Assembly (NCBI RefSeq): GCF_032444005.1
Contig: NC_091291.1
Coordinates: forward strand, 43,586,001 to 43,650,000
Source: Ranitomeya imitator
Lineage: Eukaryota
DNA: 64,000 nt
Direction: 5' to 3'
Shown here: positions 16,751-64,000 of the stretch, piece after piece
Position numbering within the stretch: position 1 is the stretch's first letter
How the letters are laid out: each line of letters starts with the position of its first letter
Position numbers and translations under genes: made by a program
The notes under the pieces: model-generated
Told to the model about the DNA's origin: nothing
What the model saw: only the letters and a program-made list of their open reading frames with translations
Databases searched by the model: none

Positions 16751-16882
16751 GTCCACAGCTGTGTCCTGAAGCACTCTAATGTCTAGGGGAAAAAAAAGAC
16801 TGAAGACAGAGCTAAGAAAAAAAAATGATGTCAGGATTTCTTTTTTCCCTCTATTGGGAATCATTGGTGAGGCTCCTTGTAC

Positions 16883-17632
16883 TGTTATGGCTGGCAATCA
16901 GGCAACACAGTGTGCAGTAATCAGCGCACATACAGAGATCTGGCAATAACCAAAAACAATAGGACGAGCTCTGAGACGTGGAATCTCTGTAGACTGCAGT
17001 ACCTGATCTATCCTCACACAACTATAAGCAGCAGTGGATTGCGCCTAACAACTACCTATGCAACTCGGCACTGCCTGAGGAGCTGACTAGCCTGAAGATA
17101 GAAATACAAGCCTGACTTACCTCAGAGAAAAACCACAAAGAAATAGGCAGCCCCCCACATATAATGACTGTTAGCAAGATGAAAAGACAAACGTAGGAAT
17201 GAAATAGATTCAGCAAAGTGAGGCCCGATATTCTAGACAGAGCGAGGATAGCAAAGAGAACTATGCAGTCTACAAAAAACCCTAAAACGAAAACCACGCA
17301 AAGGGGCAAAAAGACCCACCGTGCCGAACTAACAGCACGGCGGTGCACCCCTCTGCTTCTCAGAGCTTCCAGCAAAAGACAATAGCAAGCTGGACAGAAA
17401 AAAACAGAAAACAAACTAGAAGCACTTATCTAGCAGAGCAGCAGGCCCAAGGAAAGATGCAGTAGCTCAGATCCAACACTGGAACATTGACAAGGAGCAA
17501 GGAAGACAGACTCAGGTGGAGCTAAATAGCAAGGCAGCCAACGAGCTCACCAAAACACCTGAGGGAGGAAGCCCAGAGACTGCAATACCACTTGTGACCA
17601 CAGAAGTGAACTCAGCCACAGAATTCACAACA
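16883..17632 (-). repeat. Gypsy-1 5' LTR (750 bp)
   Basis: TGTTGTGAATTC...CCATAACA on the minus strand; TATTTA box at plus 17523-17528. Confidence 0.95.
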
Positions 17633-25414: not shown

Positions 25415-27501
25415 GGGGGGGCCCACAGTGTGTGAACAGCCCGGGGCCCTGGCTACCCTTAATCCACCCCTGAACTGACCAGTTCAAAAATTCAGTTTAG
25501 TTTGGAAATGGCAAATACTAAATTATAGAAGGTAGCCCGTATTATTATATGCCATGTGAGACCTCCAGTTGGGATTTCACATTAGCTAAAGGCAAAGGAA
25601 AAACAGTCAGGACTTCAGACTCCTTAAAACTTAAAAAATTGCCTCTGATGCCATTGTTATAGAGAAAACAATCAAATGGTTCTTCTGCCAAAAACAACCA
25701 GACTTCCTTGACCAGATCCTGGTAGGTCATCTGCAAAATACAGGCTGCCTACTGATACATAAGGCCTACGCAGTTTGACTTAAACTTCCAACATGTTGTC
25801 ACAGATGTAGTGACAGCACCAGCCATAGGTTGGGGACTAATGCCCTATAGTCTGCCTATTGAGTATGCTACACATTAGGGCAACCTGTAACCTCAATCGT
25901 GCTGCCCAAAATGTGGACAACATGAATCAGAGCCTGGCTGCACGTTTACAAAACATGAAAAACATAACCTACATCTGTTAACATTTGGTTTATTTTATTT
26001 GGTGAAGCAAACAACAAGCGGTACAAAAGAACTGAAAACTTCAGTGTGCATAACTGTTTACCCCCCTAAAGTCAGTACCCTGTAGAGCCTTCTTTTGCTG
26101 CAATTACAACTGCAAGTTGCTTCGGATAAGTCTCTATAAGCTATTCACATCTTGCCACTGGGATTTTTTTTACCAATTCCTCTAGGCAAAACTGCTCCAG
26201 CTCCTTCAAGTAATAGTCCTTCTAGATAGTTTCCTCTAGTGAACAGCAATCTTCAAGTCTGACCATAGATTGTCAATTGGATTAAAGTCTGGACTTTGAT
26301 TAGGTAGCTCCAAAACATTTACACGTTTTCTGTTAAACCATTCGAATGTTGCTTTAGCAGAATGCAGTGGGTCATTGTCTTGTTGGAAGGTGAGCCCAGT
26401 CTCAAATCATTGACAGACTGAAACAGGTTTTGCTCAAGAATATCTCAGTATTTCGCACCATCCGTCTTCCCCTCGACTCAGACCATTTTCCCTTTCCCTG
26501 CTGCTGACAAACACTCCCACAGCATGATGCTGCAGCCATCATGCTTCATTGTGGGGTCGGTGTTCTTGGTGTGATGAGCTGTGTTGGTTTGGCACCAAAC
26601 AATGTGTTACGCCACCTAATACTTACCTGTCCGGCCGGCGCGCTCCCGACGCTCCTTCTCGCTCCCCTTCGTCTGGGTTCTCAGGCGCTCGTCCTTTCTG
26701 CGGTCCGTGCATGCGCAAACACGCTCCTTTCGCCACTGTGGCTCCTTGGAGTTCGTGACTCGGTGGCTCCGCCCCCAGTATGGCAGCGCCCGTCGGGTAC
26801 TTCTTTCCTGCATCTGTACAGGTAAGACGCCTTTGCGTTTATTGAGTTCGCTGGCTTCTTGCTGACGTCTTTAAGTTCTTTGGCTCCTGTCTCTGGTCCT
26901 CACACTTTGACTCTGTCTTGACTCGTTACTAATTACCATTGTCATTCTTTTCAGCCCTTGGTCCCTGCCATCCCTGCCAGTTCTGTGTTCCAGCCGTCCC
27001 TGCCTGTCCTGTTCCTACCGTCCCTGCCAATCCTGTGTTCCCGCCATCCTTGCCAATCCTGTGTTTCCTGCCATCCCTGCCAATCCTGCGTTTCCTGCCA
27101 TCCCTGCCAGTCCTGTGTTCCTGCTATCCCTGCCAGTTCTGTATTCCTGCCGTCCCTGCCAGTCCTGTGTTCCTGCCGTCCTTGCCAATCCTGTGTTCCC
27201 GTCGTTCCCCGGCAATCGTGTGTCTTTGCCATACCGTACTTTGTCTTTGCTGCCTCTGTCCGTCCTGTGTCTCCGCCGTTCTGGTCACCTCAGTGGCTCC
27301 GTCTCTCTTCCGTCTTCCGATCTTCTTTGGTCCAGCCCACAGTCACCCCTTTGGCTCCGGCAGTTGTGGCTTCACCCTCCTTGGGCCTGTCCCAAACACT
27401 CCCTGTACAGGGGTAGCACTATCTGGTCCGCTCATCCTTGGGGGCTCTGAAGCCGCGACCCAAAGGGTCCACTTCTCGGGTTCTTATAGTACGCAAAGGC
27501 C

Positions 27502-30272: not shown

Positions 30273-30286
30273 CTAGCCTATGTTCA

Positions 30287-31530: not shown

Positions 31531-31561
<31 letters not shown>

Positions 31562-38718: not shown

Positions 38719-38759
38719 TATATAAACTGCGCATGACCGCACGGCCATGCGCTAGTATT
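38719..38759 (+). promoter_or_regulatory. LTR TATA box and inferred transcript 5' end / self-primer
   Basis: TATATAAA at 38719-38726. GCGCTAGTATT at 38749-38759 is the reverse complement of the PBS at 39179-39189. The same block is conserved in the Gypsy-5 LTR (~60651-60690, minus). Confidence 0.75.
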
Positions 38760-39206
38760 GTCTTATGTTATGTGCTTTTTGCCAGTGTGGTCACATGTAT
38801 GTGTGTTCAGGGACCCGGCTGAAATAAGCCCCTAGAATGCTGGCTCCTCCGGCGAGGAGATTGAGTCTGAATGTATTCAGGGACCCGGCTGAAATAAGCC
38901 CCTAGAATGCTGGCTCCTCCGGCGAGGAGTTTTGTGTGTTTGTGTGACCACTGACTGCTCTCTGTTTGGGCAGTTAGCCTGTGCCTCTGTGGAGTCTAAC
39001 AGGGCACAGTGCTTTCCTTTCACGGCTACTCAGTGAATTAACTGAGTTAGTCTATACCGCCATATAGCTCCGCCGTTTGCTAGCAGCAGGTACTCCTGCA
39101 CGGTGGACCCCGGGCTGCGAACGCACCAATATCAATAAACATCTCTATTTACTCGGTGCGTTCCGCTAGCCCTAACAGAATACTAGCGCCAGGGTCTGGC
39201 TAGTAA

Positions 39207-43426: not shown

Positions 43427-43653
43427 NNNNNNNNNNNNNNNNNNNNNNNNNNNNNNNNNNNNNNNNNNNNNNNNNNNNNNNNNNNNNNNNNNNNNNNNNN
43501 NNNNNNNNNNNNNNNNNNNNNNNNNNNNNNNNNNNNNNNNNNNNNNNNNNNNNNNNNNNNNNNNNNNNNNNNNNNNNNNNNNNNNNNNNNNNNNNNNNNN
43601 NNNNNNNNNNNNNNNNNNNNNNNNNNNNNNNNNNNNNNNNNNNNNNNNNNNNN
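43427..43653. other. Assembly gap (227 N)
   Basis: Run of N. Confidence 1.
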
Positions 43654-43800: not shown

Positions 43801-46150
43801 TAATTGTGGGGTTTCCACTGTTTAGGCACATCAGGGGCTCTCCAAACGCGACATGGCGTCCGATCTCAATTCCAGCCAATTCTGCGTTGAAAAAGTAAAA
43901 CAGTGCTTCTTCCCTTCCGAGCTCTCCCGTGTGCCCAAACAGGGGTTTACCCCAACATATGGGGTATCAGCGTACTCAGGACAAATAGGACAACAACTTT
44001 TGGGGTCCAATTTCTTCTGTTACCCTTGGGAAAATACAAAACTCGGGGCTAAAACATATTTTTTGTGGGAAAAAAAAGGATTTTTTATTTTCACGGCTCT
44101 GCGTTATAAACTGTAGTGAAACACTTGGGGGTTCAAAGTTCTCACAACACATCTAGATTAGTTCCCTGGGGGGTCTAGTTTCCAATATGGGGTCACTTGT
44201 GGGGGGTTTCTACTGTTTAGGTACATTAGGGGTTCTGCAAACGCAATGTGACGTCTGCAGACCATTCCATCTAAGTCTGCATTCCAAATGGCGCTCCTTC
44301 CCTTCCGAGCTCTGCCATGCGCTCAAACGGTGGTTTCCCCCAACATACGGGGTATCAGCGTACTCAGGACAAATTGGACAACAACTTTTGCGGTCGAATT
44401 TCTCCTCTTACCCTCAGGAAAATACAAAACTGGGGGCTAAAAAATAATTTTGGGGGGAAAGATTTTTTTTTTTTAATTTTCACGGCTCTGCGTTACAAAC
44501 TGTAGTGAAACACTTGGGGGTTCAAAGCTATCACAACACATCTAGATGAGTTCCTTAGGGGGTCTAGTTTCCAAAATGGTGTCACTTGTGGGAGGTTTCT
44601 ACTGTTTAGGTACATTAGGGGCTCTGCAAATGCAATGTGACACCTGCAGACCATTCCATCTAAGTCCTCATTCCAAATGGAGCTCCTTCCCTTCCGAGCC
44701 CTCCCATGTTCCCAAACAGTGGTTCCTCCCCACATATGGGGTATCAGCGCACTCAGGACAAATTGGACAACAAATTGTGGGGTCGAATTTCTCCTGTTAC
44801 CCTCGGGAAAATACAAAACTGGGGGCTAAAAAATAATTTTTGTGGGAAAAAATTTTTGTTTTATTTTTACGGCTCTCCATTATAAACTTCTGTGAAGCCC
44901 TTGGTGGGTCAAAGCGCTCAGCACACATCTAGATAAGTTCCTAAGGGGGTCTACTTTCCAAAATGGTGTCACTTGTGGGGGGTTTCTACTGTTTAGGTAC
45001 ATTAGGAGCTCTGCAAACGCAATGTGACACCTGCAGACCATTCCATCTAAGTCTGCATTCAAATGGCACTCCTTCCCTTCTGAGCCCTCCCATGTGCCCA
45101 AACAGTGGTTCCCCCCACATATGGTGTATCATCGCACTCAGGACAAATTGGGCAACAAATTTTGGGGTCCAATTTCTCCTGTTACTCTCAGGAAAATACA
45201 AAACTGGGGGCTAAAAAAATAATTTTTGTGGGAAAAAATTTTTGTTTTATTTTTACGGCTCTCCATTATAAACTTCTGTGAAGCCCTTGGTGGGTCAAAG
45301 CGCTCAGCACACATCTAGATAAGTTCCTAAGGGGGTCTACTTTCCAAAATGGTGTCACTTGTGGGGGGTTTCAATGTTTAGGCACATCAGTGGCTCTTCA
45401 AACGCAACATGGCGTCCCATCTCAATTCCTGTCAATTTTGCATTGAAAAGTCAAACGGCGCTCCTTCCCTTCCGAGCTCTCCCATCCGCCCAAACAGTGG
45501 TTTACCCCCACATATGGGCTATCAGCGTATTCAGGACAAATTGTACAACAACTTTTGGGGTCCAATTTCTTCTCTTACCCTTGGGAAAATAAAAAATTGG
45601 GGGCGAAAAGATAATTTTTGTGAAAAAATATGATTTTTTTATTTTTACGGTTCTACATTATTAACTTCTGTGAAGCACTTGGTGGGTCAAAGTGCTCACC
45701 ACACCTCTAGATAAGTTCCTTAGGGGGTCTACTTTCCAAATTGGTGTCACTTGTGGGGGGTTTCAATGTTTAGCCACATCAGGGGCTCTCCAAACGAAAC
45801 ATGGCGTCCCATCTCAATTCCAGTCAATTTTGCATTGAAAAGTCAAATGGCACTCCTTCGCTTCCGAGCTCTGCCATGCGCCCAAACAGTGGTTTACCCC
45901 CACATGTGGGTTATTGGCATACTCAGGACAAATTGTACAACAATGTTTGGGGTCCATTTTCTCCTGTTACCCTTGGTAAAATAAAACAAATTGGAGCTGA
46001 ATTAAAATTTTTGTGAAAAAAAGTTAAATGTTCATTTTTATTTAAACATTCAAAAAATTCCTGTGAAGCACCAGAAGGGTTAATAAACTTCTTGAATATG
46101 GTTTTGAGAACCTTGAGGGGTGCAGTTTTTAGAATGGTGTCACACTTGGG
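43800..46150. repeat. ~388-bp tandem array, about 6 units
   Basis: Anchor CACTTGTGGG at 44194, 44583, 44970, 45356, 45748 (spacings 389, 387, 386, 392), with partial units at both ends. Confidence 0.92.
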
Positions 46151-47253
46151 TATTTTCTATCATATAGACCCCTCAAAATGACTTCAAATGAGATGTGGTC
46201 CCTAAAATAAAATGGTGTTGTAGAAATGAGAAATTGCTGGTCAACTTTTAACCCTTATAACTCCCTAACAAAAAAAAATTTTGGTTCCAAAATTGTGCTG
46301 ATGTAAAGTAGACATGTGGGAAATGTTACTTATTAAGTATTTTGCGTGACATATCTCTGTGATTTAATTGCATAAAAATTCAAAGTTGGAAAATTGCGAA
46401 ATTTTCATAATTTTCGCCAAATTTCCGTTTTTTTCACAAATAAACGCAGGTACTATCAAAGAATTTTTACCATTGTCATGAAGTACAATATGTCACGAGA
46501 AAACAATGTCAGAATCACCAGGATCCATTGAAGCGTTCCAGAGTTATAACCTCATAAAGGGACAGTGGTCAGAATTGTAAAAATTGGCCCGGTCATTAAC
46601 GTGCAAACCACCCTTGGGGGTAAAGGGGTTAAGGACACTGCTCTCTCCTGGTTCTCTTCCTATCTTTCTGAACGCTCCTTCAGTGTTCTGTTCTCCGTCT
46701 CCTCTTCATCCCCTCTTCCTCTCACTGTGGGGGTACCTCAGGGCTCAGTTCTTCGCCCCCTTCTCTTCTCTCTCTACACGGCCCCAATTGGACAGACCAT
46801 CAGCAGATTTGGCTTTCAGTACCATCTTTATGCCGATGACACACAACTATACACTTCCTCCCCTGACCTTACTCCCGCTGTACTACAGAACGCCACTGAC
46901 TGTCTGTCTGCAGTCTCCAACATCAAGTCTGCTCTCTATCTGAAACTCAACGTCTCCAAAACTGAACTTCTTCTGCTCCCGCCATCTACTAACCTCCCTA
47001 AATCTGACATTTCCTTCTCCGTGGGTGGCACCATAATATCACCCCGGCAGCAGGCTCGCTGTCTGGGTGTTATGTTTGAGTCCAATCTCTCCTTCACCTC
47101 CCATATGCAATCTCTTGCCCGCTCGTGCCGCTTACACCTAAAGAACATCTCTAGAATCCGCCCTTTGCTCACCATGGAAACAACAAAAACCCTCACTGTC
47201 GCCCTGATCCACTCCCGCCTGGACTACTGTAACGCTCTACTAATTGGCCTCCC

Positions 47254-50200
47254 TGTTATGACCCCAATGGCGAGGGTCTCAGAGGAACGTGGAAGTCTGC
47301 AAGATACAAAAATCCAGCTCATAGGGCAGTGGTAACTGGGTTGACCATATATCTACTCCTAACGCCAACACTAGAAGTAGCCGGGGGTCATACCTACGTT
47401 GATCCTAGATGACTCGCGCCAGCCGGAGAATCTAAATACCCCTAGTAGAGGAAAACAAAGACCTCTCTTGCCTCCAGAGAAAGGGACCCCAAAGCAGGAT
47501 AGAAGCCCCCCACAAATAATAACGGTGAGGTAAGAGGAAATGACAAACACAGAAATGAACCAGGTTTAGCACAGAGAGGCCCGCTAACTAATAGCAGAAT
47601 ATAGAAAGGTAACTTATATGGTCAACAAAAAACCCTATCAAAAATCCACACTGGAAATTCAAGAACCCCCGAACCGTCTAACGGTCCGGGGGGAGAACAC
47701 CAGCGCCCTAGAGCTTCCAGCAAAAGTCAGGATACAGATTAGGAACAAGCTGGACAAAAATACAAAACCAAAAACAAATAGCAAAAAGCAAAGTAAATGA
47801 CTTAGCTGAATAACCGGACCAGGATCAGTAGACAAGAGCACAGCAGATTAGCTCTGATAACTACGTTGCCAGGCATAGAACTGAGTGTCCAGGGAGCTTA
47901 TAAAGCAACGCCCCTAACTAACGACCCAGGTGCGGATAAAAGGAAAGACAGAAAAACCAGAGTCAAAAAACTAGTAACCACTAGAGGGAGCCAAAAAGCA
48001 AATTCACAACAGTACCCCCCCCTTAGTGAGGGGTCACCGAACCCTCACCACGACCACCAGGGCGATCAGGATGAGCGGCATGAAAGGCACGAACTAAATC
48101 GGCCGCATGAACATCAGAGGCGACCACCCAGGAATTATCCTCCTGACCATAGCCCTTCCACTTGACCAGGTACTGAAGTCTTCGCCTGGAGAGGCGAGAA
48201 TCCAAGATCTTCTCCACCACGTACTCCAACTCGCCCTCAACCAACACCGGAGCAGGAGGCTCAGCAGAAGGAACTACAGGCACAACGTACCGCCGCAACA
48301 AGGACCTATGAAATACATTGTGAATAGCAAACGACACAGGAAGATCCAGACGAAAAGATACAGGATTAAGGATTTCCAATATCTTGTAAGGACCAATAAA
48401 ACGAGGTTTAAATTTGGGAGAGGAGACCTTCATAGGAACAAAGCGGGAAGAAAGCCATACCAAATCCCCAACGCGTAGTCGGGGACCCACACCGCGGCGG
48501 CGGTTGGCAAAGCGCTGAGCCCTCTCCTGTGACAACTTCAAGTTGTCCACCACATGATTCCAGATCCGCTGCAACCTATCCACCACAGAATCCACCCCAG
48601 GACAGTCAGAAGACTCCACATGACCTGAAGAAAAGCGAGGATGGAAACCAGTGTTGCAGAAAAAAGGCGAAACCAAGGTGGCGGAACTAGCCCGATTATT
48701 AAGGGCAAACTCAGCCAACGGCAAGAATGTCACCCAATCGTCCTGATCAGCAGAGACAAAACACCTCAAATAAGCCTCCAAAGTCTGATTGGTTCGCTCC
48801 GTCTGTCCATTAGTCTGAGGATGGAAAGCAGAGGAAAACGACAAATCAATGCCCATCCTACTACAAAAGGATCGCCAGAACCTGGAAACGAACTGGGATC
48901 CTCTATCTGACACAATATTCTCAGGGATGCCGTGCAAACGAACCACGTTCTGGAAAAACACAGGAACCAGATCGGAAGAGGAAGGCAGCTTAGGCAAAGG
49001 AACCAAATGGACCATCTTGGAGAAGCGATCACATATCACCCAGATAACAGACATGCCCTGAGATAGCGGAAGATCAGAAATGAAATCCATGGAGATATGT
49101 GTCCAAGGTCTCTTCGGGACAGGCAAGGGCAAGAGCAACCCGCTGGCACGAGAACAGCAAGGCTTAGCTCTAGCACAAGTCCCACAGGACTGCACAAATG
49201 ACCGCACATCCCTTGACAAAGAAGGCCACCAAAAGGACCTGGCCACCAGATCTCTGGTGCCAAAAATTCCCGGGTGACCTGCCAACACCGAGGAATGAAC
49301 CTCGGAAATGACTCTGCTGGTCCACTTATCCGGAACAAACAGTCTGTCAGGTGGACAAGACTCAGGCCTATCAGCTTGAAATCTCTGCAACACACGTCGC
49401 AGATCCGGAGAAATAGCTGATAAGATAACTCCATCCTTAAGAATACCAACAGGATCAGCGACTCCAGGAGCATCAGGCACAAAGCTCCTAGAAAGAGCAT
49501 CGGCCTTCACATTCTTTGAACCTGGTAAATACGAGACAACAAAATCAAAGCGGGAGAAAAACAATGACCAGCGGGCCTGTCTCGGATTAAGGCGTTTAGC
49601 AGACTCGAGATACATCAGATTTTTGTGATCAGTCAAGACCACCACACGATGCTTAGCACCCTCGAGCCAATGACGCCACTCCTCAAATGCCCACTTCATG
49701 GCCAACAACTCCCGATTGCCCACATCATAATTTCGCTCGGCAGGCGAAAACTTCCTAGAGAAAAAGGCACAAGGTTTCATAACAGAGCAACCAGGGCCTC
49801 TCTGCGACAAAACGGCCCCTGCTCCAATCTCCGAAGCATCCACCTCAACCTGAAAGGGAAGTGAGACATCGGGCTGGCACAAAACAGGCGCCGAAGTAAA
49901 CCGGCGTTTCAACTCCTGGAAAGCCTCCACGGCAGCAGGAGCCCAGTTAGCTACATCGGAGCCCTTCTTGGTCATATCCGTCAAAGGTTTCACAACGCTA
50001 GAAAAATTAGCGATAAAACGACGGTAGAAGTTAGCGAAACCCAAGAACTTCTGAAGACTCTTAACTGACGAGGGCTGAGTCCAATCAAGAATAGCTCGGA
50101 CCTTGACCGGGTCCATCTCCACAGCAGAAGGGGAAAAAATAAACCCCAAAAAGGGAACCTTCTGTACACCAAAGAGACACTTTGAGCCTTTGACAAACAA

Positions 50201-53043
50201 AGAATTTTCACGCAAAATTTTAAAGACCAACCTGACCTGCTCCACATGCGAGTCCCAATCATCAGAAAAAACCAAAATATCATCCAGATAAACGATCAAA
50301 AATTTATCCAGATACTTCCGGAAAATGTCATGCATAAAGGACTGAAAAACTGAAGGCGCATTGGAGAGCCCAAAAGGCATCACCAAGTACTCAAAATGAC
50401 CTTCGGGCGTATTGAATGCGGTTTTCCATTCATCACCTTGCTTAATGCGCACAAGGTTGTACGCACCACGAAGGTCTATCTTGGTGAACCACTTGGCACC
50501 TTTAATTCGGGCAAACAAGTCAGACAACAGCGGCAGAGGATACTGAAATTTGACAGTGATCTTATTTAAAAGCCGATAATCAATACAAGGCCTCAAAGAT
50601 CCGTCCTTTTTAGCCACAAAAAAGAATCCTGCACCAAGAGGGGAAGAAGACGGACGAATATGTCCTTTCTCCAAAGACTCCTTGATATACGAACGCATAG
50701 CGGTATGTTCAGGTACCGACAGATTAAAGAGTCTTCCCTTAGGAAATTTACTGCCTGGAATCAAATCTATAGCACAGTCACAGTCCCTATGAGGAGGCAA
50801 TGCACTGGACCTGGACTCGCTAAAGACATCCTGATAATCAGACAAATACTCCGGAACTTCCGAAGGCGTAGAAGAAGCAATAGACACAGGCAGGATATCC
50901 CCATGAATACCACGACAGCCCCAACTAGAAACTGACATAGCCTTCCAGTCCAGGACGGGATTATGGGTCTGTAACCATGGCAGCCCTAAAACAACCAAAT
51001 CATGCATTTTATGTAAAACAAGAAAACGTATCACCTCGCGGTGTTCAGGAGTCATGCACATGGTAACCTGTGTCCAATACTGCGGTTTATTTGCTGCCAA
51101 TGGCGTAGCATCAATACCCCTAAGAGGAATAGGATTTTCTAATAGTTCAAGAGTAAAACCACAGCGCTTAGCAAATGACAGATCCATAAGACTCAGGGCA
51201 GCACCTGAATCTACAAACGCCATGACAGGATAAGACGACAGTGAGCAAATCAAAGTTACAGACAGAATAAATTTAGGTTGCAAATTTCCAGCGGTGACCG
51301 GACCAACAACCTTAGCTATACGTTTAGAGCATGCTGAGATAACATGTGTAGAATCACCACAGTAGTAGCACAAGCCATTCCGGCGTCTATGAATTTTCCG
51401 CTCATTTCTGGTCAGGATTCTATCACATTGCATTAAATCAGGTGTCTGTTCAGACAACACCATGAGGGAATTTGCGGTTTTTCTATCACATTGCACCGAA
51501 TTAGGTGTCTGTTCAGACAACACCATGAGGGAATTTGCGGTCTTGCGTTCCCGCAATCGCCGGTCAATTTGAATAGCCAGTGCCATAGCATCATTCAGAC
51601 CTGTGGGAATGGGAAAACCCACCATAACATCTTTAATGGCATCAGAAAGACCATTTCTAAAATTAGCGGCCAGTGCACAGTCGTTCCAATGTGTCAGCAC
51701 GGACCATTTCCGAAATTTTTGGCAATACACTTCAGCCTCGTCCTGCCCCTGAGACATAGCCAGCAGGGCCTTTTCTGCCTGAATCTCAAGATTGGGTTCC
51801 TCATAAAGTAAACCGAGCGCCAGAAAAAACGCATCAATATCAGCCAATGCCGGATCTCCTGGCGCCAGCGAAAAAGCCCAATCTTGAGGGTCACCCCGTA
51901 AGAACGAAATAACAATTTTTACTTGCTGAGCGGAGTCTCCAGATGAACAGGGTCTCAGGGACAAAAACAATTTACAATTATTCTTGAAATTCCTAAACTT
52001 AAACCTGTCTCCGGAAAACAGTTCAGGAATCGGTATCTTAGGTTCTGACCCAGGACTTCTGATAACATAATCTTGTAAGCCCTGCACACGAGTAGCCAGC
52101 TGGTCCACACTTGTAATCAAGGTCTGGACATTCATGTCTGCAGCAAGCATAAGCCACTCTGAGGTAAAGGGGATGAAGAAAAAAAAAAAAAAATGAGAGA
52201 GGAGAAAAAAAAAAAAACTCAGAATCTTCTTTCTTATAATCCCTCTTTTGCAATGCATTAAACATTTAATATTGGCCTGGCAAACTGTTATGACCCCAAT
52301 GGCGAGGGTCTCAGAGGAACGTGGAAGTCTGCAAGATACAAAAATCCAGCTCATAGGGCAGTGGTAACTGGGTTGACCATATATCTACTCCTAACGCCAA
52401 CACTAGAAGTAGCCGGGGGTCATACCTACGTTGATCCTAGATGACTCGCGCCAGCCGGAGAATCTAAATACCCCTAGTAGAGGAAAACAAAGACCTCTCT
52501 TGCCTCCAGAGAAAGGGACCCCAAAGCAGGATAGAAGCCCCCCACAAATAATAACGGTGAGGTAAGAGGAAATGACAAACACAGAAATGAACCAGGTTTA
52601 GCACAGAGAGGCCCGCTAACTAATAGCAGAATATAGAAAGGTAACTTATATGGTCAACAAAAAACCCTATCAAAAATCCACACTGGAAATTCAAGAACCC
52701 CCGAACCGTCTAACGGTCCGGGGGGAGAACACCAGCGCCCTAGAGCTTCCAGCAAAAGTCAGGATACAGATTAGGAACAAGCTGGACAAAAATACAAAAC
52801 CAAAAACAAATAGCAAAAAGCAAAGTAAATGACTTAGCTGAATAACCGGACCAGGATCAGTAGACAAGAGCACAGCAGATTAGCTCTGATAACTACGTTG
52901 CCAGGCATAGAACTGAGTGTCCAGGGAGCTTATAAAGCAACGCCCCTAACTAACGACCCAGGTGCGGATAAAAGGAAAGACAGAAAAACCAGAGTCAAAA
53001 AACTAGTAACCACTAGAGGGAGCCAAAAAGCAAATTCACAACA
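47254..53043 (-). mobile_element. Gypsy-2: apparently intact chromodomain Gypsy LTR retrotransposon (5790 bp)
   Basis: 758-bp LTRs (47254-48011, 52286-53043) with no difference found by eye; the ORF track gives identical peptides at offset 5032. TSD CCTCCC. Single gag-pol ORF. Confidence 0.98.
48023..52150 (-). CDS. Gypsy-2 Gag-Pol polyprotein (~1375 aa; gag, PR, RT, RNase H, IN, chromodomain)
   Basis: Likely ATG at 52150 or 52135. CYYCGDSTHVISAC, FVDSGA, YLDDIL, TDHKNL, SMDF / VSDRG / QTER (D-D-E), YVVEKILD...YLVKWKGY...SW. Stop lies in the PPT. Confidence 0.95.
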   Translation of the reverse strand: MLAADMNVQTLITSVDQLATRVQGLQDYVIRSPGSEPKIPIPELFSGDRFKFRNFKNNCKLFLSLRPCSSGDSAQQVKIVISFLRGDPQDWAFSLAPGDPALADIDAFFLALGLLYEEPNLEIQAEKALLAMSQGQDEAEVYCQKFRKWSVLTHWNDCALAANFRNGLSDAIKDVMVGFPIPTGLNDAMALAIQIDRRLRERKTANSLMVLSEQTPNSVQCDRKTANSLMVLSEQTPDLMQCDRILTRNERKIHRRRNGLCYYCGDSTHVISACSKRIAKVVGPVTAGNLQPKFILSVTLICSLSSYPVMAFVDSGAALSLMDLSFAKRCGFTLELLENPIPLRGIDATPLAANKPQYWTQVTMCMTPEHREVIRFLVLHKMHDLVVLGLPWLQTHNPVLDWKAMSVSSWGCRGIHGDILPVSIASSTPSEVPEYLSDYQDVFSESRSSALPPHRDCDCAIDLIPGSKFPKGRLFNLSVPEHTAMRSYIKESLEKGHIRPSSSPLGAGFFFVAKKDGSLRPCIDYRLLNKITVKFQYPLPLLSDLFARIKGAKWFTKIDLRGAYNLVRIKQGDEWKTAFNTPEGHFEYLVMPFGLSNAPSVFQSFMHDIFRKYLDKFLIVYLDDILVFSDDWDSHVEQVRLVFKILRENSLFVKGSKCLFGVQKVPFLGFIFSPSAVEMDPVKVRAILDWTQPSSVKSLQKFLGFANFYRRFIANFSSVVKPLTDMTKKGSDVANWAPAAVEAFQELKRRFTSAPVLCQPDVSLPFQVEVDASEIGAGAVLSQRGPGCSVMKPCAFFSRKFSPAERNYDVGNRELLAMKWAFEEWRHWLEGAKHRVVVLTDHKNLMYLESAKRLNPRQARWSLFFSRFDFVVSYLPGSKNVKADALSRSFVPDAPGVADPVGILKDGVILSAISPDLRRVLQRFQADRPESCPPDRLFVPDKWTSRVISEVHSSVLAGHPGIFGTRDLVARSFWWPSLSRDVRSFVQSCGTCARAKPCCSRASGLLLPLPVPKRPWTHISMDFISDLPLSQGMSVIWVICDRFSKMVHLVPLPKLPSSSDLVPVFFQNVVRLHGIPENIVSDRGSQFVSRFWRSFCSRMGIDLSFSSAFHPQTNGQTERTNQTLEAYLRCFVSADQDDWVTFLPLAEFALNNRASSATLVSPFFCNTGFHPRFSSGHVESSDCPGVDSVVDRLQRIWNHVVDNLKLSQERAQRFANRRRGVGPRLRVGDLVWLSSRFVPMKVSSPKFKPRFIGPYKILEILNPVSFRLDLPVSFAIHNVFHRSLLRRYVVPVVPSAEPPAPVLVEGELEYVVEKILDSRLSRRRLQYLVKWKGYGQEDNSWVVASDVHAADLVRAFHAAHPDRPGGRGEGSVTPH

Positions 53044-55168
53044 CCTCCCCCTCACTCGACTTTCCCCTCTCCAGTCTATCCTTAATGCAGCAGCCAGGGT
53101 CGTCCATCTGGCTAGTCATTTCTCAGATGCATCCGCTCTTCGCCAGTCGTTACACTGGCTGCCCATTCATTACAGGATACAATTCAAAGTACTTGTTCTC
53201 ACCCACAAAGCTCTCCACAGTGTAGCACCCCCTTACATCTCCTCCCTCATTTCGGTCTATCGGCCTAGCCGACCACTGCGCTCTGCAAATGACTTTCGAC
53301 TAATCTCTGCACTAATCCGTACCTCCCACTCCCGACTCCAAGACTTCTCCCGCGCTGTGCCAATCTTCTGGAATGCTCTACCCCAAGATATTAGGACCAT
53401 CCATAATTTGCATAGTTTTAGGCGCTCGCTCAAAACACATTTGTTCAGAGCGGCCTATCACATTCAGTAATCAAAGTCATGTTATGTTTGTGTGTGTGTA
53501 GCCCATTCACTACTTCCATCTATCCTCCACCCCCTGAAGATGGTTGGACCATCATTGTAAATACATCATTGTAAATACACACCTGTGCTTTGTATCTCCT
53601 CCACCTCATTGTAGATTGTAAGCTCTCACGAGCAGGGTCGTCTTGTTTTGCTTTAATTATTGTATTGTTAACGTTGTTACATATGACTGTTGTGTTTGAA
53701 ACTGTTAAACTGTAAAGCGCTGCGGAATATGTTGGCACTATATAAATAAAGATTATTATTATTATTATAGCATAGGATACAGTTAAATCTTTGGGACCAG
53801 CCCAGCCTGCAATGGGACAAGGTCAAGTAAAAAGGGGAAACACTTCCTGGTTGAGTTAGAGAAAGTGTGAGGTTTGTGTGTAGTTCAGGTTCAAGTTGCA
53901 GTGGACTAAGGGCATGTAGAGTACATATCGTTCTGGCAGTATGAGGTTATACCAGATTTCATGCGGACATTCTTGTAAAATCCGGAGCCTATGGGGCAAA
54001 CTAGGCACTGAGGAGTGTGCCTTAATCTCTTCCATACAGAGGAAACCGAATGGGGAAATGCGTGAGGGAAATGTAACGGATCTCGGGAGTGCTATGGTAC
54101 CGGACGGAAAATCCCTGGGGCTGTCAGGAGGATCAAGGGATAGTCCGAGCTGAACATAAGCAAGAGCTTGAAATGTACTGTGTTGATGGAACTGGGACTG
54201 GAGGGTGCTGTGTCGAATACTGCATGTTAAAGACTGATGTACTTGAACTGTCCCGTAAATTTGAACTTGTTATAATGAAGTGGGTGTTCCCGCATATGTG
54301 TGTGGCTGATCCTGCTGATCCTGGATCTAAGGACGTGGATGCAGAGTAGACCTCCAGCCTGCAAGTGAGTACAATGCAATGTACACACCACAACACTAAT
54401 GGCCAAGAACACTTTGTTTGTGGGGTACCAGGGTGTGGAAAAGCAGCAGCTCACCCACGGCTACCGCCATGGGTACCTTATTCAGCCCCCTGTAGTATGA
54501 AACCCCTAAGTATAATCCTGAATGGCCAATTGCCTCCAGAAGTCACATAATTAGTAAATTGCATCCACCTGTGTATAATTTATTCTCAGTATAACTACAG
54601 CTGTCCACTGAAGGGCTCAGATGTTTTTTTTTTGAGAATATTAGGTATCAAGCATCATGAAACACAAGGAATTCACCAGATGGGTCAGGGATAATGTTAT
54701 GGAGAAGAGTAAAGTGGCCCATGGCCTCTCTAGAGGAACTGCAGAGACCCACAGCTCAAGCTGGAGAATCTGTACACAGCTACTATTACTTGTATACTCC
54801 ACAAATCTGGTCTTTATAGAATAGTAGCAAGAAGATAGCCATTTCTGAAAGTAAGCCATAAGAAGTCCTGTTTGCAAAATCCTTGTCGAGGTCACAGCTA
54901 GCATGTGGAAGAAGGCGCTCTGGTCAGATGAGACCAAGGTAGAACTTTTTTGGATAAATGCAAAATGCTATACAATCCCAACCATCAAACATGATGGTGG
55001 CAGCATTATGCTGTGCAAATGCTTGCCTTGAGCAGTGACAGAGAAGCTGGTCAGAGTTGATGGGAAGATGGATCAAAATACAGAGCATTCCTGGATGAAA
55101 ACCTGTCAGAACCTGCAAAAGACTTGAGACTGGGGCATAGGTTCACGTTCCAAGAGAACAACTACCCA

Positions 55169-60064: not shown

Positions 60065-63000
60065 TGTTATGGACAGGCGGAACGCACCAAGTATAGATGA
60101 CATGAAACTAGGTGCGTTCGCAGTCCGAGGTCCACCGTGCAGGTAAAAACCCCGCTGCTAGCAAAGACGGACTATATGGCGGTACTATAAGAATACACAC
60201 ATGGGTTAACTTCACCCTGCGTGAAGGAAGCGACCCTGTTGCGTCACAGGACCGCGGTACCGCACATAGAGCGCAAGCAAGAAGTCAGCGAACACAACCC
60301 CAACTCAGGATTGAAGTCCGATTAGACCACTTGCTGGCACAACACCGCAACTGGGTGTGTTAGGAAACTATTATAATAGAAAATAAAGGCACGAGAGTGC
60401 GTGCGGTGCCGCACTGACGGACGCCACTAACCACCCAGGCTTGGGTAAGGAAAGCGCAGAGGAAGCGCACGGCGCCGTACTGGCGGACACAGCAACTGGA
60501 CGCTGTGATGTGTGTTACGTGCAGATGGCTAGTCGGGCGCTAGATAGCTACCATCATCCGCGAGCAGTCAACAACACTAGGGAGGGATACTTAGGAGCTT
60601 TCATCCATCGACATACATCCATCTACACACACACATAATATCAAGACAATACTAGCGCATGGCCGTGCGGTCATGCGCAGTTTATATAGTTGCAGCACAG
60701 GAAGCTGCTACAGAAGTTTTGCCCTTTCAGGACCTGCCAGGAGGACCAATGGGATGTGCTGCAGTACCTGAGCATGTGACCCTTGATCTCCAATGGGAGA
60801 TCTTGCCCTGGGCATGCTCAGTGTGTGCAAATAAGGACTTAGTCCCAGAGAAGCCTGCTCGCCGCAGATCAGTGCAGGGTACAACAGGAGAGCCAGAAAA
60901 GGCAGCAGTAACCCTTTGCACAGAATCAGTCCCAGCGAGACGCTGGGAGCGACGCCTCCGCTGAGCAGAGCCCACTGCGGCCGAAGCAGAATGGGAGACC
61001 GCAGCAGACACTGATCGAGATTCCCCCTGTGCAGCAGAGGAAACTCGACTCCTAACATTACCCCCCCTCCAAGGGCCCCCCCCTCCTTGGGCCTCGCTAC
61101 GTTCGAAGGCAGCAATAAGCTGCGGAGCCCGAATGTGCTCAGCAGGCTCCCAGGACCTATCCTCAGGGCCGTAACCCTTCCAGTCCACCCAAAAAAATTT
61201 TTTGCCCCGTACCACCTTGCACCCCAAGATAGCGTTCACCTCGAAATCGTCCGTAGACGAACCCGATGTCTCGGCAGATGACTCAGAAAACCGGGACATG
61301 TATACGGGCTTAAGGAGGGACACATGAAAGGTGTTGGTGATACCAAGGCGTGGAGGAAGGGCCAGACGGTAGACCACAGGATTAACCTGTTCGAGGACCT
61401 TGAAGGGACCCAAGTAGCGAGGAGCAAACTTAGTGGACTCAACTCGCAGCCTGATGTTACGGGTGGAGAGCCACACCAAGTCGCCAGGAGCAAAGGTCGG
61501 AGTGGGGCGCCGATGAGCATCGGCGGAGGACCTCATTCTCTCCTTAGAGGCCCGAATGGCATCCTGAGTGCGGTCCCAAATATCCCGTGCCTCCACAGCC
61601 CAGTCTGCCACCCTGGCGTCGGCGGAAGACACGGGCATAGGCACAGGTACCCATGGATGCTGACTATAGTTGAGGAGGAATGGGGTTTGTCCAGTGGAGT
61701 CGGCTACGGCGTTGTTCAGCGCAAACTCTGCCCATGATAGCAAGGATGCCCAGTCATCCTGCCTGGCTGAAACAAAATGTCGCAGGTATGTGACCAAGGT
61801 CTGGTTGGCCCTCTCTACCAACCCATTCGTCTCGGGATGATAAGCAGAAGAGAGATTCAACTCAATACTGAGAAGACGACAAAGCTCTCTCCAGAACCGA
61901 GACGCAAACTGGGGACCCCGCTCACTGACAATTTTGTCAGGCATACCATATAGGCGGAAGATGTGTTTAATGAACAACGCTGCCAAGGCCCGTGCAGAAG
62001 GTAACCGTGGTAGCAGCACCAAATGCACCATTTTTGAGAAATGATCGGTGATGACCCAAATGATGGTACAGCCGCGAGACTTGGGTAAACCCACGACAAA
62101 GTCCATCCCGACCATCTCCCAGGGCCTATTTGCCACCGGCAAGGGATAGAGCAACCCAGCTGGCCTTTGACGCGGAGATTTATTTTTGGCGCAGGAGATA
62201 CACGCCAGAATATAATCCCTGACATCCCGGACCATATGCGGCCACCAGTACGTCCTCGCCAGTAGCTCAGATGTCCTTTTTGTCCCAAAGTGTCCACCCA
62301 CCCTGGACGAATGAGCCCAAGAGAGAACCTCCGGTCGCAAATTAATGGGCACAAAAGTCTTGCCCGGAGGCACAGACTCTAGCGAAACCGGCGCAACGGT
62401 TCTCAGGCTCTCAGAAGGGACAATAAGCCGAGGCTCCTCTTCCTCCTCCTCAGTTGACATAAGGGAGCGAGAGAGAGCGTCGGCACGAATATTCTTCTCC
62501 CCGGCGAGATAATGCAGAGTAAAATGGAACCGGGAGAAAAATAAGGACCATCTGGCCTGACGAGAATTCAGCCGCTGGGCTGTGTGTAAATACACCAAAT
62601 TTTTGTGGTCCGTGAAGACCTGGAAGGGAAACCGTGCACCTTCCAGAAGATGTCTCCACTCTGAAAAGGCCAACTTCATTGCTAGCAACTCCCTATCCCC
62701 GATGGAGTAATTTCTCTCCGCTGATGTGAAGGTCTTAGAGAAGAAGAAGCATGGATGCTTCCGACCTTGAGCGTCCTTTTGATAGAGGACTGCTCCAGCA
62801 CCAACGGATGAGGCATCCACCTCCATTAGGAATGGCTTATCCACATCGGGGCGATGTAAGATGGGAGCGCTAGCAAAATGAGACTTAACAGAAGTGAAGG
62901 CCTTGGAGACCTCTTCCGACCACAATTTGGGATTCGCTCCCTTCTTGGTGAGGGCCACCAAGGGAGCTACCAGAGTTGAGAAGTGGGGAATGAACTGGCG

Positions 63001-64000
63001 GTAATAATTAATGAACCCCATAAAGCGCTGCACCGCCTTAAGAGAATGGGGCTCTTGCCAGTCCATCACAGCCTGTAGTTTGGCAGGATCCATAGCCAAT
63101 CCCTGGGCGGAGATGATATAGCCCAGGAACGGTAAAGACTCCTGCTCAAACATACACTTCTCCAACTTTGCATAGAGAGAGTTTGCCCGTAGGAGGTCGA
63201 AGACTCTGCCAACATCTCTCCGGTGGGAGTCAATATCTGGAGAAAAGATGAGAATATCATCCAGATAGACTACAACCGAGGTGGAAAGCATATCCCGGAA
63301 GATGTCGTTGACAAAGTCTTGGAAAACGGCTGGGGCATTACAGAGCCCGAAGGGCATCACCAGATACTCATAGTGCCCATCTCTGGTGTTAAACGCCGTT
63401 TTCCATTCGTCCCCCTCACGGATGCGAATCAGGTTGTAAGCACCCCGCAGATCTAATTTAGTAAACACTCTAGCTCCCCGAAGCCTATCGAAGAGCTCAG
63501 ATATCAAGGGCAAAGGATACTTGTTCTTAACGGTGATAGCGTTAAGACCCCTGTAGTCTATGCATGGACGTAGTTCCCCATTCTTCTTCTGCACAAAGAA
63601 GAACCCTGCCCCAGCAGGTGACACTGACTTCCTGATGAACCCTCTTGCCAGATTCTCTTGAATATACTGAGACATGGCCTCCGTCTCCGGGAGAGATAAT
63701 GGATAAACTCGACCCCGGGGAGGCTCTGCACCAGGCAAGAGATCGATGGGACAGTCATAAGGGCGATGGGGCGGAAGGGTCTCCACCGCCTTTTTGGAGA
63801 ACACGTCTGCATAAGACCAGTATTGCTTGGGGAGAGAGGAAAGATCTGCGGGTACCTCAGTAGTAGCAACCTGAACGCACTCTCGGTGACACCTACCCCC
63901 ACATGATTCACCCCATCCCAGAATTCTGCCTGAGGACCACTCGATGTGAGGAGAGTGGAACCGTAACCAAGGTATCCCCAACAGGACCTCATCAATCCCC
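60065..64000 (-). mobile_element. Gypsy-5 (same family as Gypsy-4): 3' LTR and pol, cut by window end
   Basis: LTR at 60065-61057 homologous to 38277-39177; PPT next to 61058; continuous pol. Confidence 0.96.
60727..63981 (-). CDS. Gypsy-5 pol (RT, RNase H, integrase, chromodomain), partial; reads into the LTR
   Basis: [31 protein letters not shown] (catalytic D>E), FEVNAIL...VDWKGYGPEDRSWEP. Confidence 0.92.
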   Translation of the reverse strand: MGIPWLRFHSPHIEWSSGRILGWGESCGGRCHRECVQVATTEVPADLSSLPKQYWSYADVFSKKAVETLPPHRPYDCPIDLLPGAEPPRGRVYPLSLPETEAMSQYIQENLARGFIRKSVSPAGAGFFFVQKKNGELRPCIDYRGLNAITVKNKYPLPLISELFDRLRGARVFTKLDLRGAYNLIRIREGDEWKTAFNTRDGHYEYLVMPFGLCNAPAVFQDFVNDIFRDMLSTSVVVYLDDILIFSPDIDSHRRDVGRVFDLLRANSLYAKLEKCMFEQESLPFLGYIISAQGLAMDPAKLQAVMDWQEPHSLKAVQRFMGFINYYRQFIPHFSTLVAPLVALTKKGANPKLWSEEVSKAFTSVKSHFASAPILHRPDVDKPFLMEVDASSVGAGAVLYQKDAQGRKHPCFFFSKTFTSAERNYSIGDRELLAMKLAFSEWRHLLEGARFPFQVFTDHKNLVYLHTAQRLNSRQARWSLFFSRFHFTLHYLAGEKNIRADALSRSLMSTEEEEEEPRLIVPSESLRTVAPVSLESVPPGKTFVPINLRPEVLSWAHSSRVGGHFGTKRTSELLARTYWWPHMVRDVRDYILACISCAKNKSPRQRPAGLLYPLPVANRPWEMVGMDFVVGLPKSRGCTIIWVITDHFSKMVHLVLLPRLPSARALAALFIKHIFRLYGMPDKIVSERGPQFASRFWRELCRLLSIELNLSSAYHPETNGLVERANQTLVTYLRHFVSARQDDWASLLSWAEFALNNAVADSTGQTPFLLNYSQHPWVPVPMPVSSADARVADWAVEARDIWDRTQDAIRASKERMRSSADAHRRPTPTFAPGDLVWLSTRNIRLRVESTKFAPRYLGPFKVLEQVNPVVYRLALPPRLGITNTFHVSLLKPVYMSRFSESSAETSGSSTDDFEVNAILGCKVVRGKKFFWVDWKGYGPEDRSWEPAEHIRAPQLIAAFERSEAQGGGGPWRGGNVRSRVSSAAQGESRSVSAAVSHSASAAVGSAQRRRRSQRLAGTDSVQRVTAAFSGSPVVPCTDLRRAGFSGTKSLFAHTEHAQGKISHWRSRVTCSGTAAHPIGPPGRS

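What the first reader, a model, noticed from the sequence alone, without database searches (positions are those of the whole stretch)
52275..52936. Gypsy-2 (intact copy): 9-nt self-primer, again exactly 30 nt from a TATA-like box
On the minus strand the LTR is followed by GT then TTGCCAGGC (plus 52275-52283). The LTR contains the complement GCCTGGCAA (plus 52898-52906), beginning 30 nt downstream of TTTATAA (plus 52930-52936). The sequence is unrelated to the Gypsy-4 primer but the layout is the same. A 9-bp duplex is shorter than the 11 bp of Tf1, so either shorter primers suffice or extra RNA structure helps. Because this copy looks intact, it is the best experimental substrate.
Basis: partly seen in the sequence, partly recalled or inferred. 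Interest (0 to 1): 0.7.

Follow-up and report, generated by a model that had tools for sequence, protein, structure and literature searches.

The report
Self-priming frog gypsy retrotransposon
A young, uninterrupted gypsy-type jumping gene in a poison-frog-like genome has no tRNA primer site; its primer site pairs with 9 bases at the predicted start of its own RNA, the self-priming habit already known from yeast Tf1 and its vertebrate relatives, so this is a clean new example of a known mechanism.

Summary
On the minus strand, a 5,790-bp Ty3/gypsy chromovirus (47254-53043) has two identical 758-bp LTRs and a 6-bp target duplication. It carries one open gag-PR-RT-RNaseH-IN-chromodomain frame.

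Two bases (GT) after the 5' LTR lies TTGCCAGGC. Its exact complement GCCTGGCAA sits once per LTR, starting 30 nt after TTTATAA.

Alone, the 9-mer is only modestly unlikely (p about 0.03). Three other chromoviruses in the same window show the same layout with unrelated sequences (combined p about 2e-5). In the sister family Gypsy-1 the primer occupies the homologous LTR columns. It differs at 7 of 9 positions, each matched by a compensating change in its PBS.

No canonical tRNA site (TGG...) lies within 129 nt of the LTR. Folding predicts that the 5' end pairs with the PBS across about 620 nt.

This is Tf1/sushi-type self-priming, already described for fungi and vertebrates. Earlier follow-ups of this scan reached the same conclusion on other DNA of this genome.

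The transcription start, the RNase H cut and the extra 'pretzel' duplexes remain untested.

The 9-bp duplex is GC-rich and predicted to be as stable as the 11-mer of Gypsy-4. Interest is low: a new member of a known kind.

The parts
47254..53043 (-). Full-length Ty3/gypsy chromovirus ('Gypsy-2'), 5,790 bp
   Evidence: The LTR pair is 100% identical. There is a single open frame with all domains.
53044..53049 (-). Target-site duplication GGGAGG, upstream copy
   Evidence: Contigs of the uninterrupted site share 6 letters across the joint 47247->53044.
47248..47253 (-). Target-site duplication GGGAGG, downstream copy
52286..53043 (-). 5' LTR, 758 nt, TGTTG...ATAACA
52907..53043 (-). Inferred U3 (137 nt)
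   Evidence: Follows from the predicted start at 52906. This is inference.
52930..52936 (-). TATA-like box TTTATAA, 30 nt before the primer's first base
52898..52906 (-). Predicted self-primer GCCTGGCAA, taken as the first 9 nt of the RNA (predicted start at G 52906, preceded by T)
   Evidence: It lies in columns homologous to the Gypsy-1 primer.
52286..52906 (-). Inferred R-U5 (621 nt), a structured RNA domain closed by the primer-PBS helix
   Evidence: The MFE and centroid structures both pair nt 1-9 with the PBS, with z = -3.1. Pair probabilities are 0.68-1.0.
52284..52285 (-). 2-nt spacer GT between the LTR's CA and the PBS
   Evidence: Gypsy-1 and Gypsy-3 have the same GT spacer.
52275..52283 (-). 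Primer-binding site TTGCCAGGC
52136..52274 (-). U-rich leader with no tRNA-type PBS; the only TGG is 130 nt after the LTR
48023..52135 (-). gag-pol open frame from the likely start ATG (52135) to the TAA stop. It holds a Gag zinc knuckle, PR (DSG), RT (YLDD), RNase H, IN, a Tf2-type SH3 domain and a chromodomain.
48015..48024 (-). Polypurine tract AAGGGGGGGG. It overlaps the stop codon and is followed by TAC (48014-48012) before the 3' LTR.
   Evidence: Gypsy-1 has the same G-run plus TAC, and Gypsy-3 has GGGGGTAC.
47254..48011 (-). 3' LTR, identical to the 5' LTR, with its own primer copy at 47866-47874
16872..17528 (-). Comparison pair in Gypsy-1: TATTTAG 17528-17522, primer GCTCCTTGT 17498-17490, spacer GT, PBS ACAAGGAGC 16880-16872
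26829..27500 (+). Comparison pair in Gypsy-3: primer GCCTTTGCGT 26829-26838, spacer GT, PBS ACGCAAAGGC 27491-27500
38719..39189 (+). Comparison pair in Gypsy-4: TATATAAA 38719-38726, primer GCGCTAGTATT 38749-38759, spacer G, PBS AATACTAGCGC 39179-39189

Best explanation
Gypsy-2 is a recently inserted Tf1/sushi-type chromovirus. It starts reverse transcription with its own RNA and not with a tRNA.

Proposed steps:
1. RNA polymerase II starts at or next to G 52906, about 30 nt after the TATA-like box. (Inferred.)
2. The first 9 nt fold back over the roughly 620-nt R-U5 domain and pair with the PBS, which lies 2 nt beyond the LTR. (Complementarity shown; folding predicted.)
3. The element's RNase H cuts the RNA at the end of the duplex. 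(Inferred from Tf1, where the cut falls between nt 11 and 12.)
4. The freed 3'-OH of A9 primes minus-strand DNA, which copies GT, then U5 and R. (Inferred.)
5. The polypurine tract AAGGGGGGGG primes the plus strand. The spacers TAC and GT leave 2-3 extra bases beyond TG...CA, and integrase trims them. Integration makes a 6-bp duplication. (Duplication shown; the rest inferred.)
6. The plus strand copies the RNA primer while it is still attached. A change in the primer can thus be written into the PBS of the progeny. This would explain why the pair can drift freely yet stay complementary between families. (Inferred from Tf1 cDNA data.)
For: - The letters and spacing are exact.
- The longest LTR complement of the post-LTR sequence is this 9-mer, at a spacer of 2 nt.
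- Four families in one window share the layout with unrelated sequences. All four primers begin GC and follow a pyrimidine. Fisher combined p is about 2e-5.
- The Gypsy-1 and Gypsy-2 LTRs align without gaps from the TATA-like box through the primer. The primer differs at 7 of 9 positions, and the PBS changes to match at all 7.
- There is no TGG within 129 nt after the LTR, so no canonical tRNA PBS. There are no tRNA genes in the window and no Rfam match.
- The MFE and centroid folds of the RNA from the predicted start pair nt 1-9 with the PBS. Pair probability is 0.68-1.0 in Gypsy-2 and 0.84-1.0 in Gypsy-1.
- Duplex energies run from -13.9 to -16.1 kcal/mol whatever the length.
- The protein is a chromodomain Ty3/gypsy polyprotein in one frame. 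Its fish relatives at 57-58% identity are named Tf2 polyprotein by their sources.
- Literature: self-priming is a common feature of Tf1/sushi elements, including vertebrate ones (PMC10085805, PMC6317226, PMC4600332). In Tf1 the first 11 nt pair with the PBS and RNase H cuts between nt 11 and 12 (PMC7175516). About half of Tf1 cDNA keeps a single-stranded copy of the PBS (PMC11042837).
- Contigs from three separate studies carry the primer and PBS unchanged.
Against: - No RNA data: no run on record as RNA held the element, and contigs cannot show a start. The start at G 52906 is therefore unproven.
- The single 9-mer has p of only about 0.03.
- Gypsy-3 lacks a TATA-like box at -30.
- In Gypsy-3 and Gypsy-4 the fold does not favour the primer-PBS helix (pair probability 0 and 0.1).
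- The two extra 'pretzel' duplexes that Tf1 needs were not found above chance.
- No canonical polyadenylation signal was found in the LTR, so the end of R is unknown.
- Clade membership was not tested with a tree that includes Tf1 or sushi-ichi.
Confidence: 0.8

Rival explanations
1. Self-priming occurs, but the transcript starts upstream of the 9-mer. The primer is then internal, and the RNase H cut leaves a short 5' flap. The 30-nt spacing from the TATA-like box would be incidental.
For: The start site is untested. Gypsy-3 has the pair but no TATA-like box at -30.
Against: Three of the four families place a TATA-like box exactly 30 nt upstream. All four have a pyrimidine/G step at the primer's first base. 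In Tf1 the primer is the very 5' end of the RNA (PMC7175516).
Confidence: 0.1
2. The 5'-end/PBS pairing is real but serves another purpose: closing the leader for packaging, dimerisation, strand transfer or translation control. Priming would then use another molecule, such as an internal tRNA fragment.
For: The R-U5 domain is strongly structured (z = -3.1). Many of its helices are kept between Gypsy-1 and Gypsy-2. Priming itself was not observed.
Against: The paired site sits exactly where a PBS must be, 2 nt after the CA. This mirrors the conserved TAC spacer after the polypurine tract. No tRNA-type site exists in the leader. The pair differs completely between families, which no shared cellular primer could follow.
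Confidence: 0.06
3. The complementarity is a chance match of a 9-mer in a 758-nt LTR.
For: About 3% of shuffled LTRs give a match of 9 nt or more within 0-6 nt of the LTR end.
Against: The layout recurs in four families, with a combined p of about 2e-5. The spacer is the same, the LTR position is homologous, and Gypsy-1 versus Gypsy-2 shows 7 compensatory changes. Controls on the 3' flanks give only 6 nt.
Confidence: 0.03

Closest known systems
Tf1 / Tf2 of Schizosaccharomyces pombe, the founding self-primed LTR retrotransposons
   Same: Both are chromodomain Ty3/gypsy elements with gag and pol in one frame. In both, the PBS is complementary to the start of the element's own RNA and not to a tRNA. 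The primer sequence lies in the LTR just after the promoter.
   Different: Tf1 uses 11 nt and this element uses 9. The frog element has a 2-nt spacer between the LTR and the PBS. In Tf1 the PBS appears to follow the LTR directly (PMC11042837). Here about 620 nt separate the primer from the PBS. Tf1's three-duplex 'pretzel' could not be shown here. Cleavage and priming are experimentally proven for Tf1 only.
Vertebrate Tf1/sushi group (sushi-ichi of pufferfish and the fish and amphibian elements of Butler et al. 2001, as cited in PMC6317226, PMC4600332 and PMC10085805)
   Same: The host group is vertebrates, the architecture is a chromovirus, and self-priming is predicted from 5'-end/PBS complementarity. 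Xenopus and fish polyproteins are 55-58% identical over RT-IN.
   Different: This is a separate, very young family of dendrobatid frogs. It is 88-92% identical to Ranitomeya imitator proteins. I could not read Butler et al. 2001, so I cannot say how its primer lengths and spacers compare.
Tj1 of S. japonicus and the Tcn1 clade of fungi and non-seed plants
   Same: Self-priming is predicted from the same sequence signature (PMC4600332, PMC6317226).
   Different: These have distant hosts. [quoted passage not shown]
tRNA-primed Ty3/gypsy elements and retroviruses
   Same: They share the LTR-PBS...PPT-LTR layout, TG...CA ends, a 2-nt spacer before the PBS, and the PPT.
   Different: Their PBS begins TGG and pairs with 8-18 nt of a tRNA 3' end. 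No such site exists here.

Membership tests
Tf1/sushi self-priming chromoviruses | Ty3/gypsy domain order (PR-RT-RNaseH-IN) with a C-terminal chromodomain | tested here: met
   Pfam finds RVT_1, RT_RNaseH, Integrase_H2C2, rve, SH3_Tf2-1 and Chromo in one 1,443-codon frame. The best solved relative is Ty3 Gag-Pol.
Tf1/sushi self-priming chromoviruses | The PBS next to the 5' LTR is complementary to a sequence in the same LTR and not to a tRNA 3' end | tested here: met
   A 9-bp perfect complement lies 2 nt after the CA. There is no TGG within 129 nt.
Tf1/sushi self-priming chromoviruses | The complementary LTR sequence is the very 5' end of the mRNA | not testable with these tools
   No run on record as RNA was found, and the runs laid were contigs only. 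The only support is indirect: a TATA-like box at -30 and a T/G step at -1/+1.
Tf1/sushi self-priming chromoviruses | RNase H cuts the RNA at the end of the primer-PBS duplex to free the primer | not testable with these tools
   This is a biochemical step, known for Tf1 only (PMC7175516).
Tf1/sushi self-priming chromoviruses | Three-duplex 'pretzel': two more duplexes between PBS-adjacent sequences and LTR sequences downstream of the primer (PMC10085805) | tested here: inconclusive
   In the Gypsy-2 fold a short GUUAU/AUAAC helix extends the primer-PBS helix. By eye, similar GUU/AAC pairs can be drawn in Gypsy-1 and Gypsy-4, though the MFE folds do not show them. Duplex searches on both sides of the PBS were no better than shuffles.
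Tf1/sushi self-priming chromoviruses | Primer and PBS co-vary between related elements | tested here: met
   Gypsy-1 versus Gypsy-2: 7 of 9 pairs changed on both sides and none broken, at homologous LTR columns. Gypsy-3 and Gypsy-4 have further unrelated pairs.
Tf1/sushi self-priming chromoviruses | Placement inside the Tf1/sushi clade in an RT/IN tree with reference elements | not tested
   No Tf1, Tf2 or sushi-ichi sequence could be obtained with these tools. The only hint is that fish relatives at 57-58% identity are named Tf2 polyprotein by their sources.
tRNA-primed LTR retrotransposons | A PBS beginning TGG, complementary to a tRNA 3' CCA end, within a few bases of the 5' LTR | tested here: not met
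   The post-LTR sequence starts GTTTGCCAGG. The first TGG is 130 nt downstream, just before the gag ATG.

The most novel reading that the evidence does not exclude
The primer/PBS pair may act as a fast-changing private 'address'. The plus strand copies the attached RNA primer into the new PBS, so primer changes are self-fixing. Co-resident chromovirus families in this repeat-rich frog genome may thereby be driven apart: the primer is 2 of 9 identical between Gypsy-1 and Gypsy-2, against a mean column identity of 77% over the LTR alignment. That would prevent cross-priming between families. It might also let the elements escape host small RNAs that target primer-binding sites. A 9-bp GC-rich helix spanning about 620 nt would then be the minimal working unit.
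Probability: 0.12. Interest if true: 0.5.

Novelty: new member of a known kind. Interest (0 to 1): 0.2.

Why it matters
This adds a well-resolved, very young amphibian example to the self-primed Tf1/sushi group. It shows four different primer/PBS pairs side by side within 64 kb.

That gives natural compensatory-change evidence for the mechanism in a vertebrate. It also shows that primer length (9-11 nt) trades off with GC content at roughly constant duplex stability.

Gypsy elements make up a large and expressed share of dendrobatid genomes (PMC6278860). Knowing that the families seen here do not depend on a tRNA primer is useful for annotation, because PBS-based LTR finders that expect tRNA sites will miss or misplace them. 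It also bears on ideas about host control through tRNA fragments.

It does not change what is known about the mechanism.

Tried and rejected
- RNA evidence for the start site. The run search returned no run on record as RNA. The four runs laid were contigs, which cannot show starts. They gave only the uninterrupted-site joint, other insertion sites, and unchanged primer and PBS letters.
The other collections hold no animal genomes, so only the window's own four families were used.
- Original papers. Levin 1995, Lin & Levin 1997 and 1998, Atwood-Moore 2006 and Butler 2001 are not held. I relied on later papers that describe them.
- Pretzel duplexes. Duplex searches around the PBS were no better than shuffles.
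- RNAalifold on Gypsy-1 and Gypsy-2. MAFFT misaligned both ends, so the primer-PBS helix was not scored. The internal helices look conserved, but with two sequences there is no valid control.
- Rfam gave only a sub-threshold snoRNA-like hit, taken as chance.
- The PDB search showed only general Ty3 and retroviral relatives and says nothing about the clade.
- A Pfam scan of Gag alone gave a weak DUF4939 hit (E = 0.023), which was not used.
- No AATAAA or ATTAAA was found in the LTR, so the end of R is undefined.
- A tree for clade placement was considered and dropped. Without reference or outgroup sequences it could not decide anything.
Full report
**What is there**

The finding lies in the 5' LTR and leader of a complete LTR retrotransposon on the minus strand, 47254-53043. 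The two LTRs are 758 nt (TGTTG...ATAACA) and identical at every base. The element is flanked by a 6-bp duplication, GGGAGG.

Contigs from public runs of the same organism include an uninterrupted version of the site. In it, the joint 47247->53044 shares 6 letters. They also include other junctions of the same LTR with unrelated flanks. The flanking DNA is itself repeated, so these uninterrupted sites are probably paralogous copies. Even so, they confirm the ends of the insertion.

One contig shows T, not G, after the terminal CA at another insertion. This favours TG...CA ends with a 6-bp duplication over CAG ends with 5 bp.

Between the LTRs lies one open frame of 1,443 codons. Pfam finds a retrotransposon Gag, an aspartic protease, RT, RNase H, the integrase zinc and core domains, a Tf2-type SH3 domain and a chromodomain. 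The DSG and YLDD motifs and a CX2CX4HX4C knuckle are present. The likely start codon is at 52135.

The stop codon TAA overlaps the polypurine tract AAGGGGGGGG. TAC follows it, and then the 3' LTR.

The nearest proteins in the public collection come from Ranitomeya imitator (88-92% identity) and Dendrobates tinctorius (78%). Xenopus and many fish follow at 55-58%, and some of the fish proteins are named Tf2 polyprotein by their sources. The host is therefore a dendrobatid-like frog.

**Checking the observation**

Every coordinate in the finding is right.
- The LTR ends at 52286. GT follows, then TTGCCAGGC at 52283-52275.
- The exact complement GCCTGGCAA is at 52906-52898, which is LTR nt 138-146.
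- TTTATAA is at 52936-52930, so the spacing is 30 nt.
- The duplex is exactly 9 bp, with mismatches on both sides.
- The 9-mer occurs nowhere else in the window except in the 3' LTR copy.

I asked without prior assumption for the longest perfect complement between the LTR and any segment starting 0-6 nt after it. The answer is this 9-mer, 2 nt after the LTR. About 3% of dinucleotide-preserving shuffles of the LTR do as well. On its own the match is only suggestive.

**Why it is nevertheless real**

A protein search of the window with the Gypsy-2 polyprotein found four more chromovirus bodies. Three of them have a 5' LTR and leader inside the window. The same unbiased search gives the following.

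| Family | Primer | Length | Spacer | PBS | TATA-like box at -30 | Shuffle p |
|---|---|---|---|---|---|---|
| Gypsy-1 | GCTCCTTGT | 9 | GT | ACAAGGAGC | TATTTAG | 0.05 |
| Gypsy-2 | GCCTGGCAA | 9 | GT | TTGCCAGGC | TTTATAA | 0.03 |
| Gypsy-3 | GCCTTTGCGT | 10 | GT | ACGCAAAGGC | none | 0.012 |
| Gypsy-4 | GCGCTAGTATT | 11 | G | AATACTAGCGC | TATATAAA | 0.001 |

The Fisher combined p is about 2e-5. This does not count the shared spacer or the shared GC start after a pyrimidine, nor the TATA spacing seen in three of the four families. Host flanks after the 3' LTRs, used as controls, give only 6 nt.

The strongest single piece of evidence comes from Gypsy-1, the sister family.
- Its polyprotein is 77-87% identical to Gypsy-2, and its pol DNA is 79% identical.
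- The two LTRs align without gaps from the TATA-like box through the primer, so the two primers occupy homologous columns.
- The primers differ at 7 of 9 positions, and the PBS carries the matching change at all 7. There are seven double changes, no one-sided change and no broken pair.

**Ruling out a tRNA**

A canonical PBS begins TGG, because every tRNA ends in CCA. In Gypsy-2 the first TGG after the LTR is 130 nt away, just before the gag ATG. None of the four families has TGG at the PBS position. ARAGORN finds no tRNA gene in the window and Rfam finds nothing credible in the element. A shared cellular primer also could not follow four unrelated PBS sequences.

**Folding**

I folded the RNA from the predicted start to 25 nt past the PBS (657 nt).
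- Both the minimum-energy and the centroid structures pair nt 1-9 with the PBS, closing the whole R-U5 domain. The domain is more stable than shuffles (z = -3.1).
- Pair probabilities of the nine pairs are 0.68-1.0 in Gypsy-2 and 0.84-1.0 in Gypsy-1.
- The older, decayed Gypsy-3 and the truncated Gypsy-4 do not favour the helix (0 and 0.1).
- Predicted duplex energies are -16.1, -13.9, -16.1 and -15.6 kcal/mol for the 9-, 9-, 10- and 11-mers.

The short primers are GC-rich and no weaker than the long one.

**How it most likely works**

The mechanism is as set out under Best explanation. Four things are shown: the complementarity, its position, its co-variation and the target duplication. Four things are inferred: the start site, the RNase H cut, the priming itself and the trimming of the ends.

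The conserved spacers are what one expects if both primers define the ends of a linear cDNA that integrase then trims to TG...CA. These are TAC after the G-run in Gypsy-1, -2 and -3, and GT before the PBS in the same three.

About half of Tf1 cDNA keeps a single-stranded DNA copy of the PBS at its 3' end (PMC11042837), which means the plus strand copies the attached self-primer. By the same logic a primer change here would be written into the next PBS. That is a simple route to the paired changes seen between families. This last point is inference.

**Comparison with what is known**

- Self-priming was discovered in Tf1. Its first 11 nt pair with the PBS, and RNase H cuts between nt 11 and 12 (PMC7175516).
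- It is described as a common feature of the Tf1/sushi group of chromoviruses, which includes vertebrate elements. The source is Butler et al. 2001, as cited in PMC10085805, PMC6317226 and PMC4600332.
- Tf1 also needs a three-duplex 'pretzel' (PMC10085805). Here I found only a short helix next to the primer-PBS helix (GUUAU/AUAAC in Gypsy-2). A duplex search on either side of the PBS was no better than shuffles, so that feature is undecided.
- Clade placement by a tree with Tf1 or sushi-ichi could not be done, because no reference sequences were obtainable.

The element therefore works like a Tf1/sushi element. It meets every membership feature that sequence alone can test except the undecided pretzel. 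Three features remain open: the 5'-end mapping, the cleavage and the tree.

**Novelty and earlier work**

Earlier follow-ups of this scan, on other pieces of the same genome, reached the same reading: s1-294759, s1-288117, s1-294765 and s1-271789. The notes on this window's Gypsy-4 and Gypsy-1 (s1-307372, s1-307507) describe the pairs that I re-derived independently.

The dendrobatid genome paper that I checked reports abundant, germline-expressed Gypsy elements but does not discuss priming (PMC6278860). The verdict is a new member of a known kind, with low interest.

**Limits**

- No RNA runs were available.
- Several original papers are not held.
I describe the copy as uninterrupted but do not single it out for mobilisation.

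Noticed in passing
window 51418-51544 (-): An in-frame tandem duplication of 63-64 nt (92% identical) inside gag. It repeats a 21-residue stretch (RKTANSLMVLSEQTP...QCD) just before the zinc knuckle.
   Followed up: partly
window 52136-52274 (-) and 16800-16871 (-): The leader between the PBS and the gag ATG is very U-rich in Gypsy-2, with T-runs of 13 and 15. Gypsy-1 has similar T-runs. Their function is unknown.
   Followed up: no
window 52136-52354 (-): The long frame stays open for 73 codons upstream of the likely gag ATG. It begins at an ATG inside U5 (52354) and reads through the LTR end, the PBS and the leader. This is probably chance, but it was not tested in relatives.
   Followed up: no
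window 11951-17632 (-): Gypsy-1 is the sister family of Gypsy-2. Its LTRs are 98.4% identical with a 10-nt indel, and its 6-bp duplication is GGTTTG. The frame is broken by at least one stop in gag and a frameshift near 14243.
   Followed up: partly
window 26605-32954 (+): Gypsy-3 is an older element with LTRs about 86% identical and no clear target duplication. Its LTRs end TA, not CA. They hold arrays of a 26-nt repeat (26952-27220 and 32491-32760). Homology to pol starts only about 80 nt after the PBS, so gag seems to be missing. The body has a gap in homology at 28806-30273.
   Followed up: partly
window 61105-63993 (-): A fifth chromovirus body, 50% identical to the Gypsy-2 polyprotein, runs off the end of the window. 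Its 5' LTR and PBS are not available.
   Followed up: no
window 52286-52906 (-) versus 16883-17498 (-): The R-U5 domains of Gypsy-1 and Gypsy-2 share many predicted helices. In 27 of 112 consensus pairs both sides have changed, including an 11-bp hairpin near 52698-52725. With only two sequences there is no valid control.
   Followed up: partly
window 52898-52906 versus 17490-17498: The primer is much less conserved between the sister families (2 of 9 identical) than the LTR alignment as a whole (mean column identity 77%). This hints that the pair drifts or diversifies faster than its surroundings.
   Followed up: partly
window 43898-46038 (+), gap 43427-43653: A satellite with units of about 388-393 bp lies next to an N gap. 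The gap was left untouched.
   Followed up: no
window 22829-24347 (+): A minisatellite of 20-22-nt units (GGGGCAATGCTGGAGACAGT-like) with higher-order periods of about 130 nt.
   Followed up: no
window 47150-47253 and 53044-53140: The DNA flanking Gypsy-2 is itself a high-copy repeat, with contig depths up to about 1,200. Uninterrupted versions appear in all four runs laid. The element therefore sits inside another repeat.
   Followed up: partly
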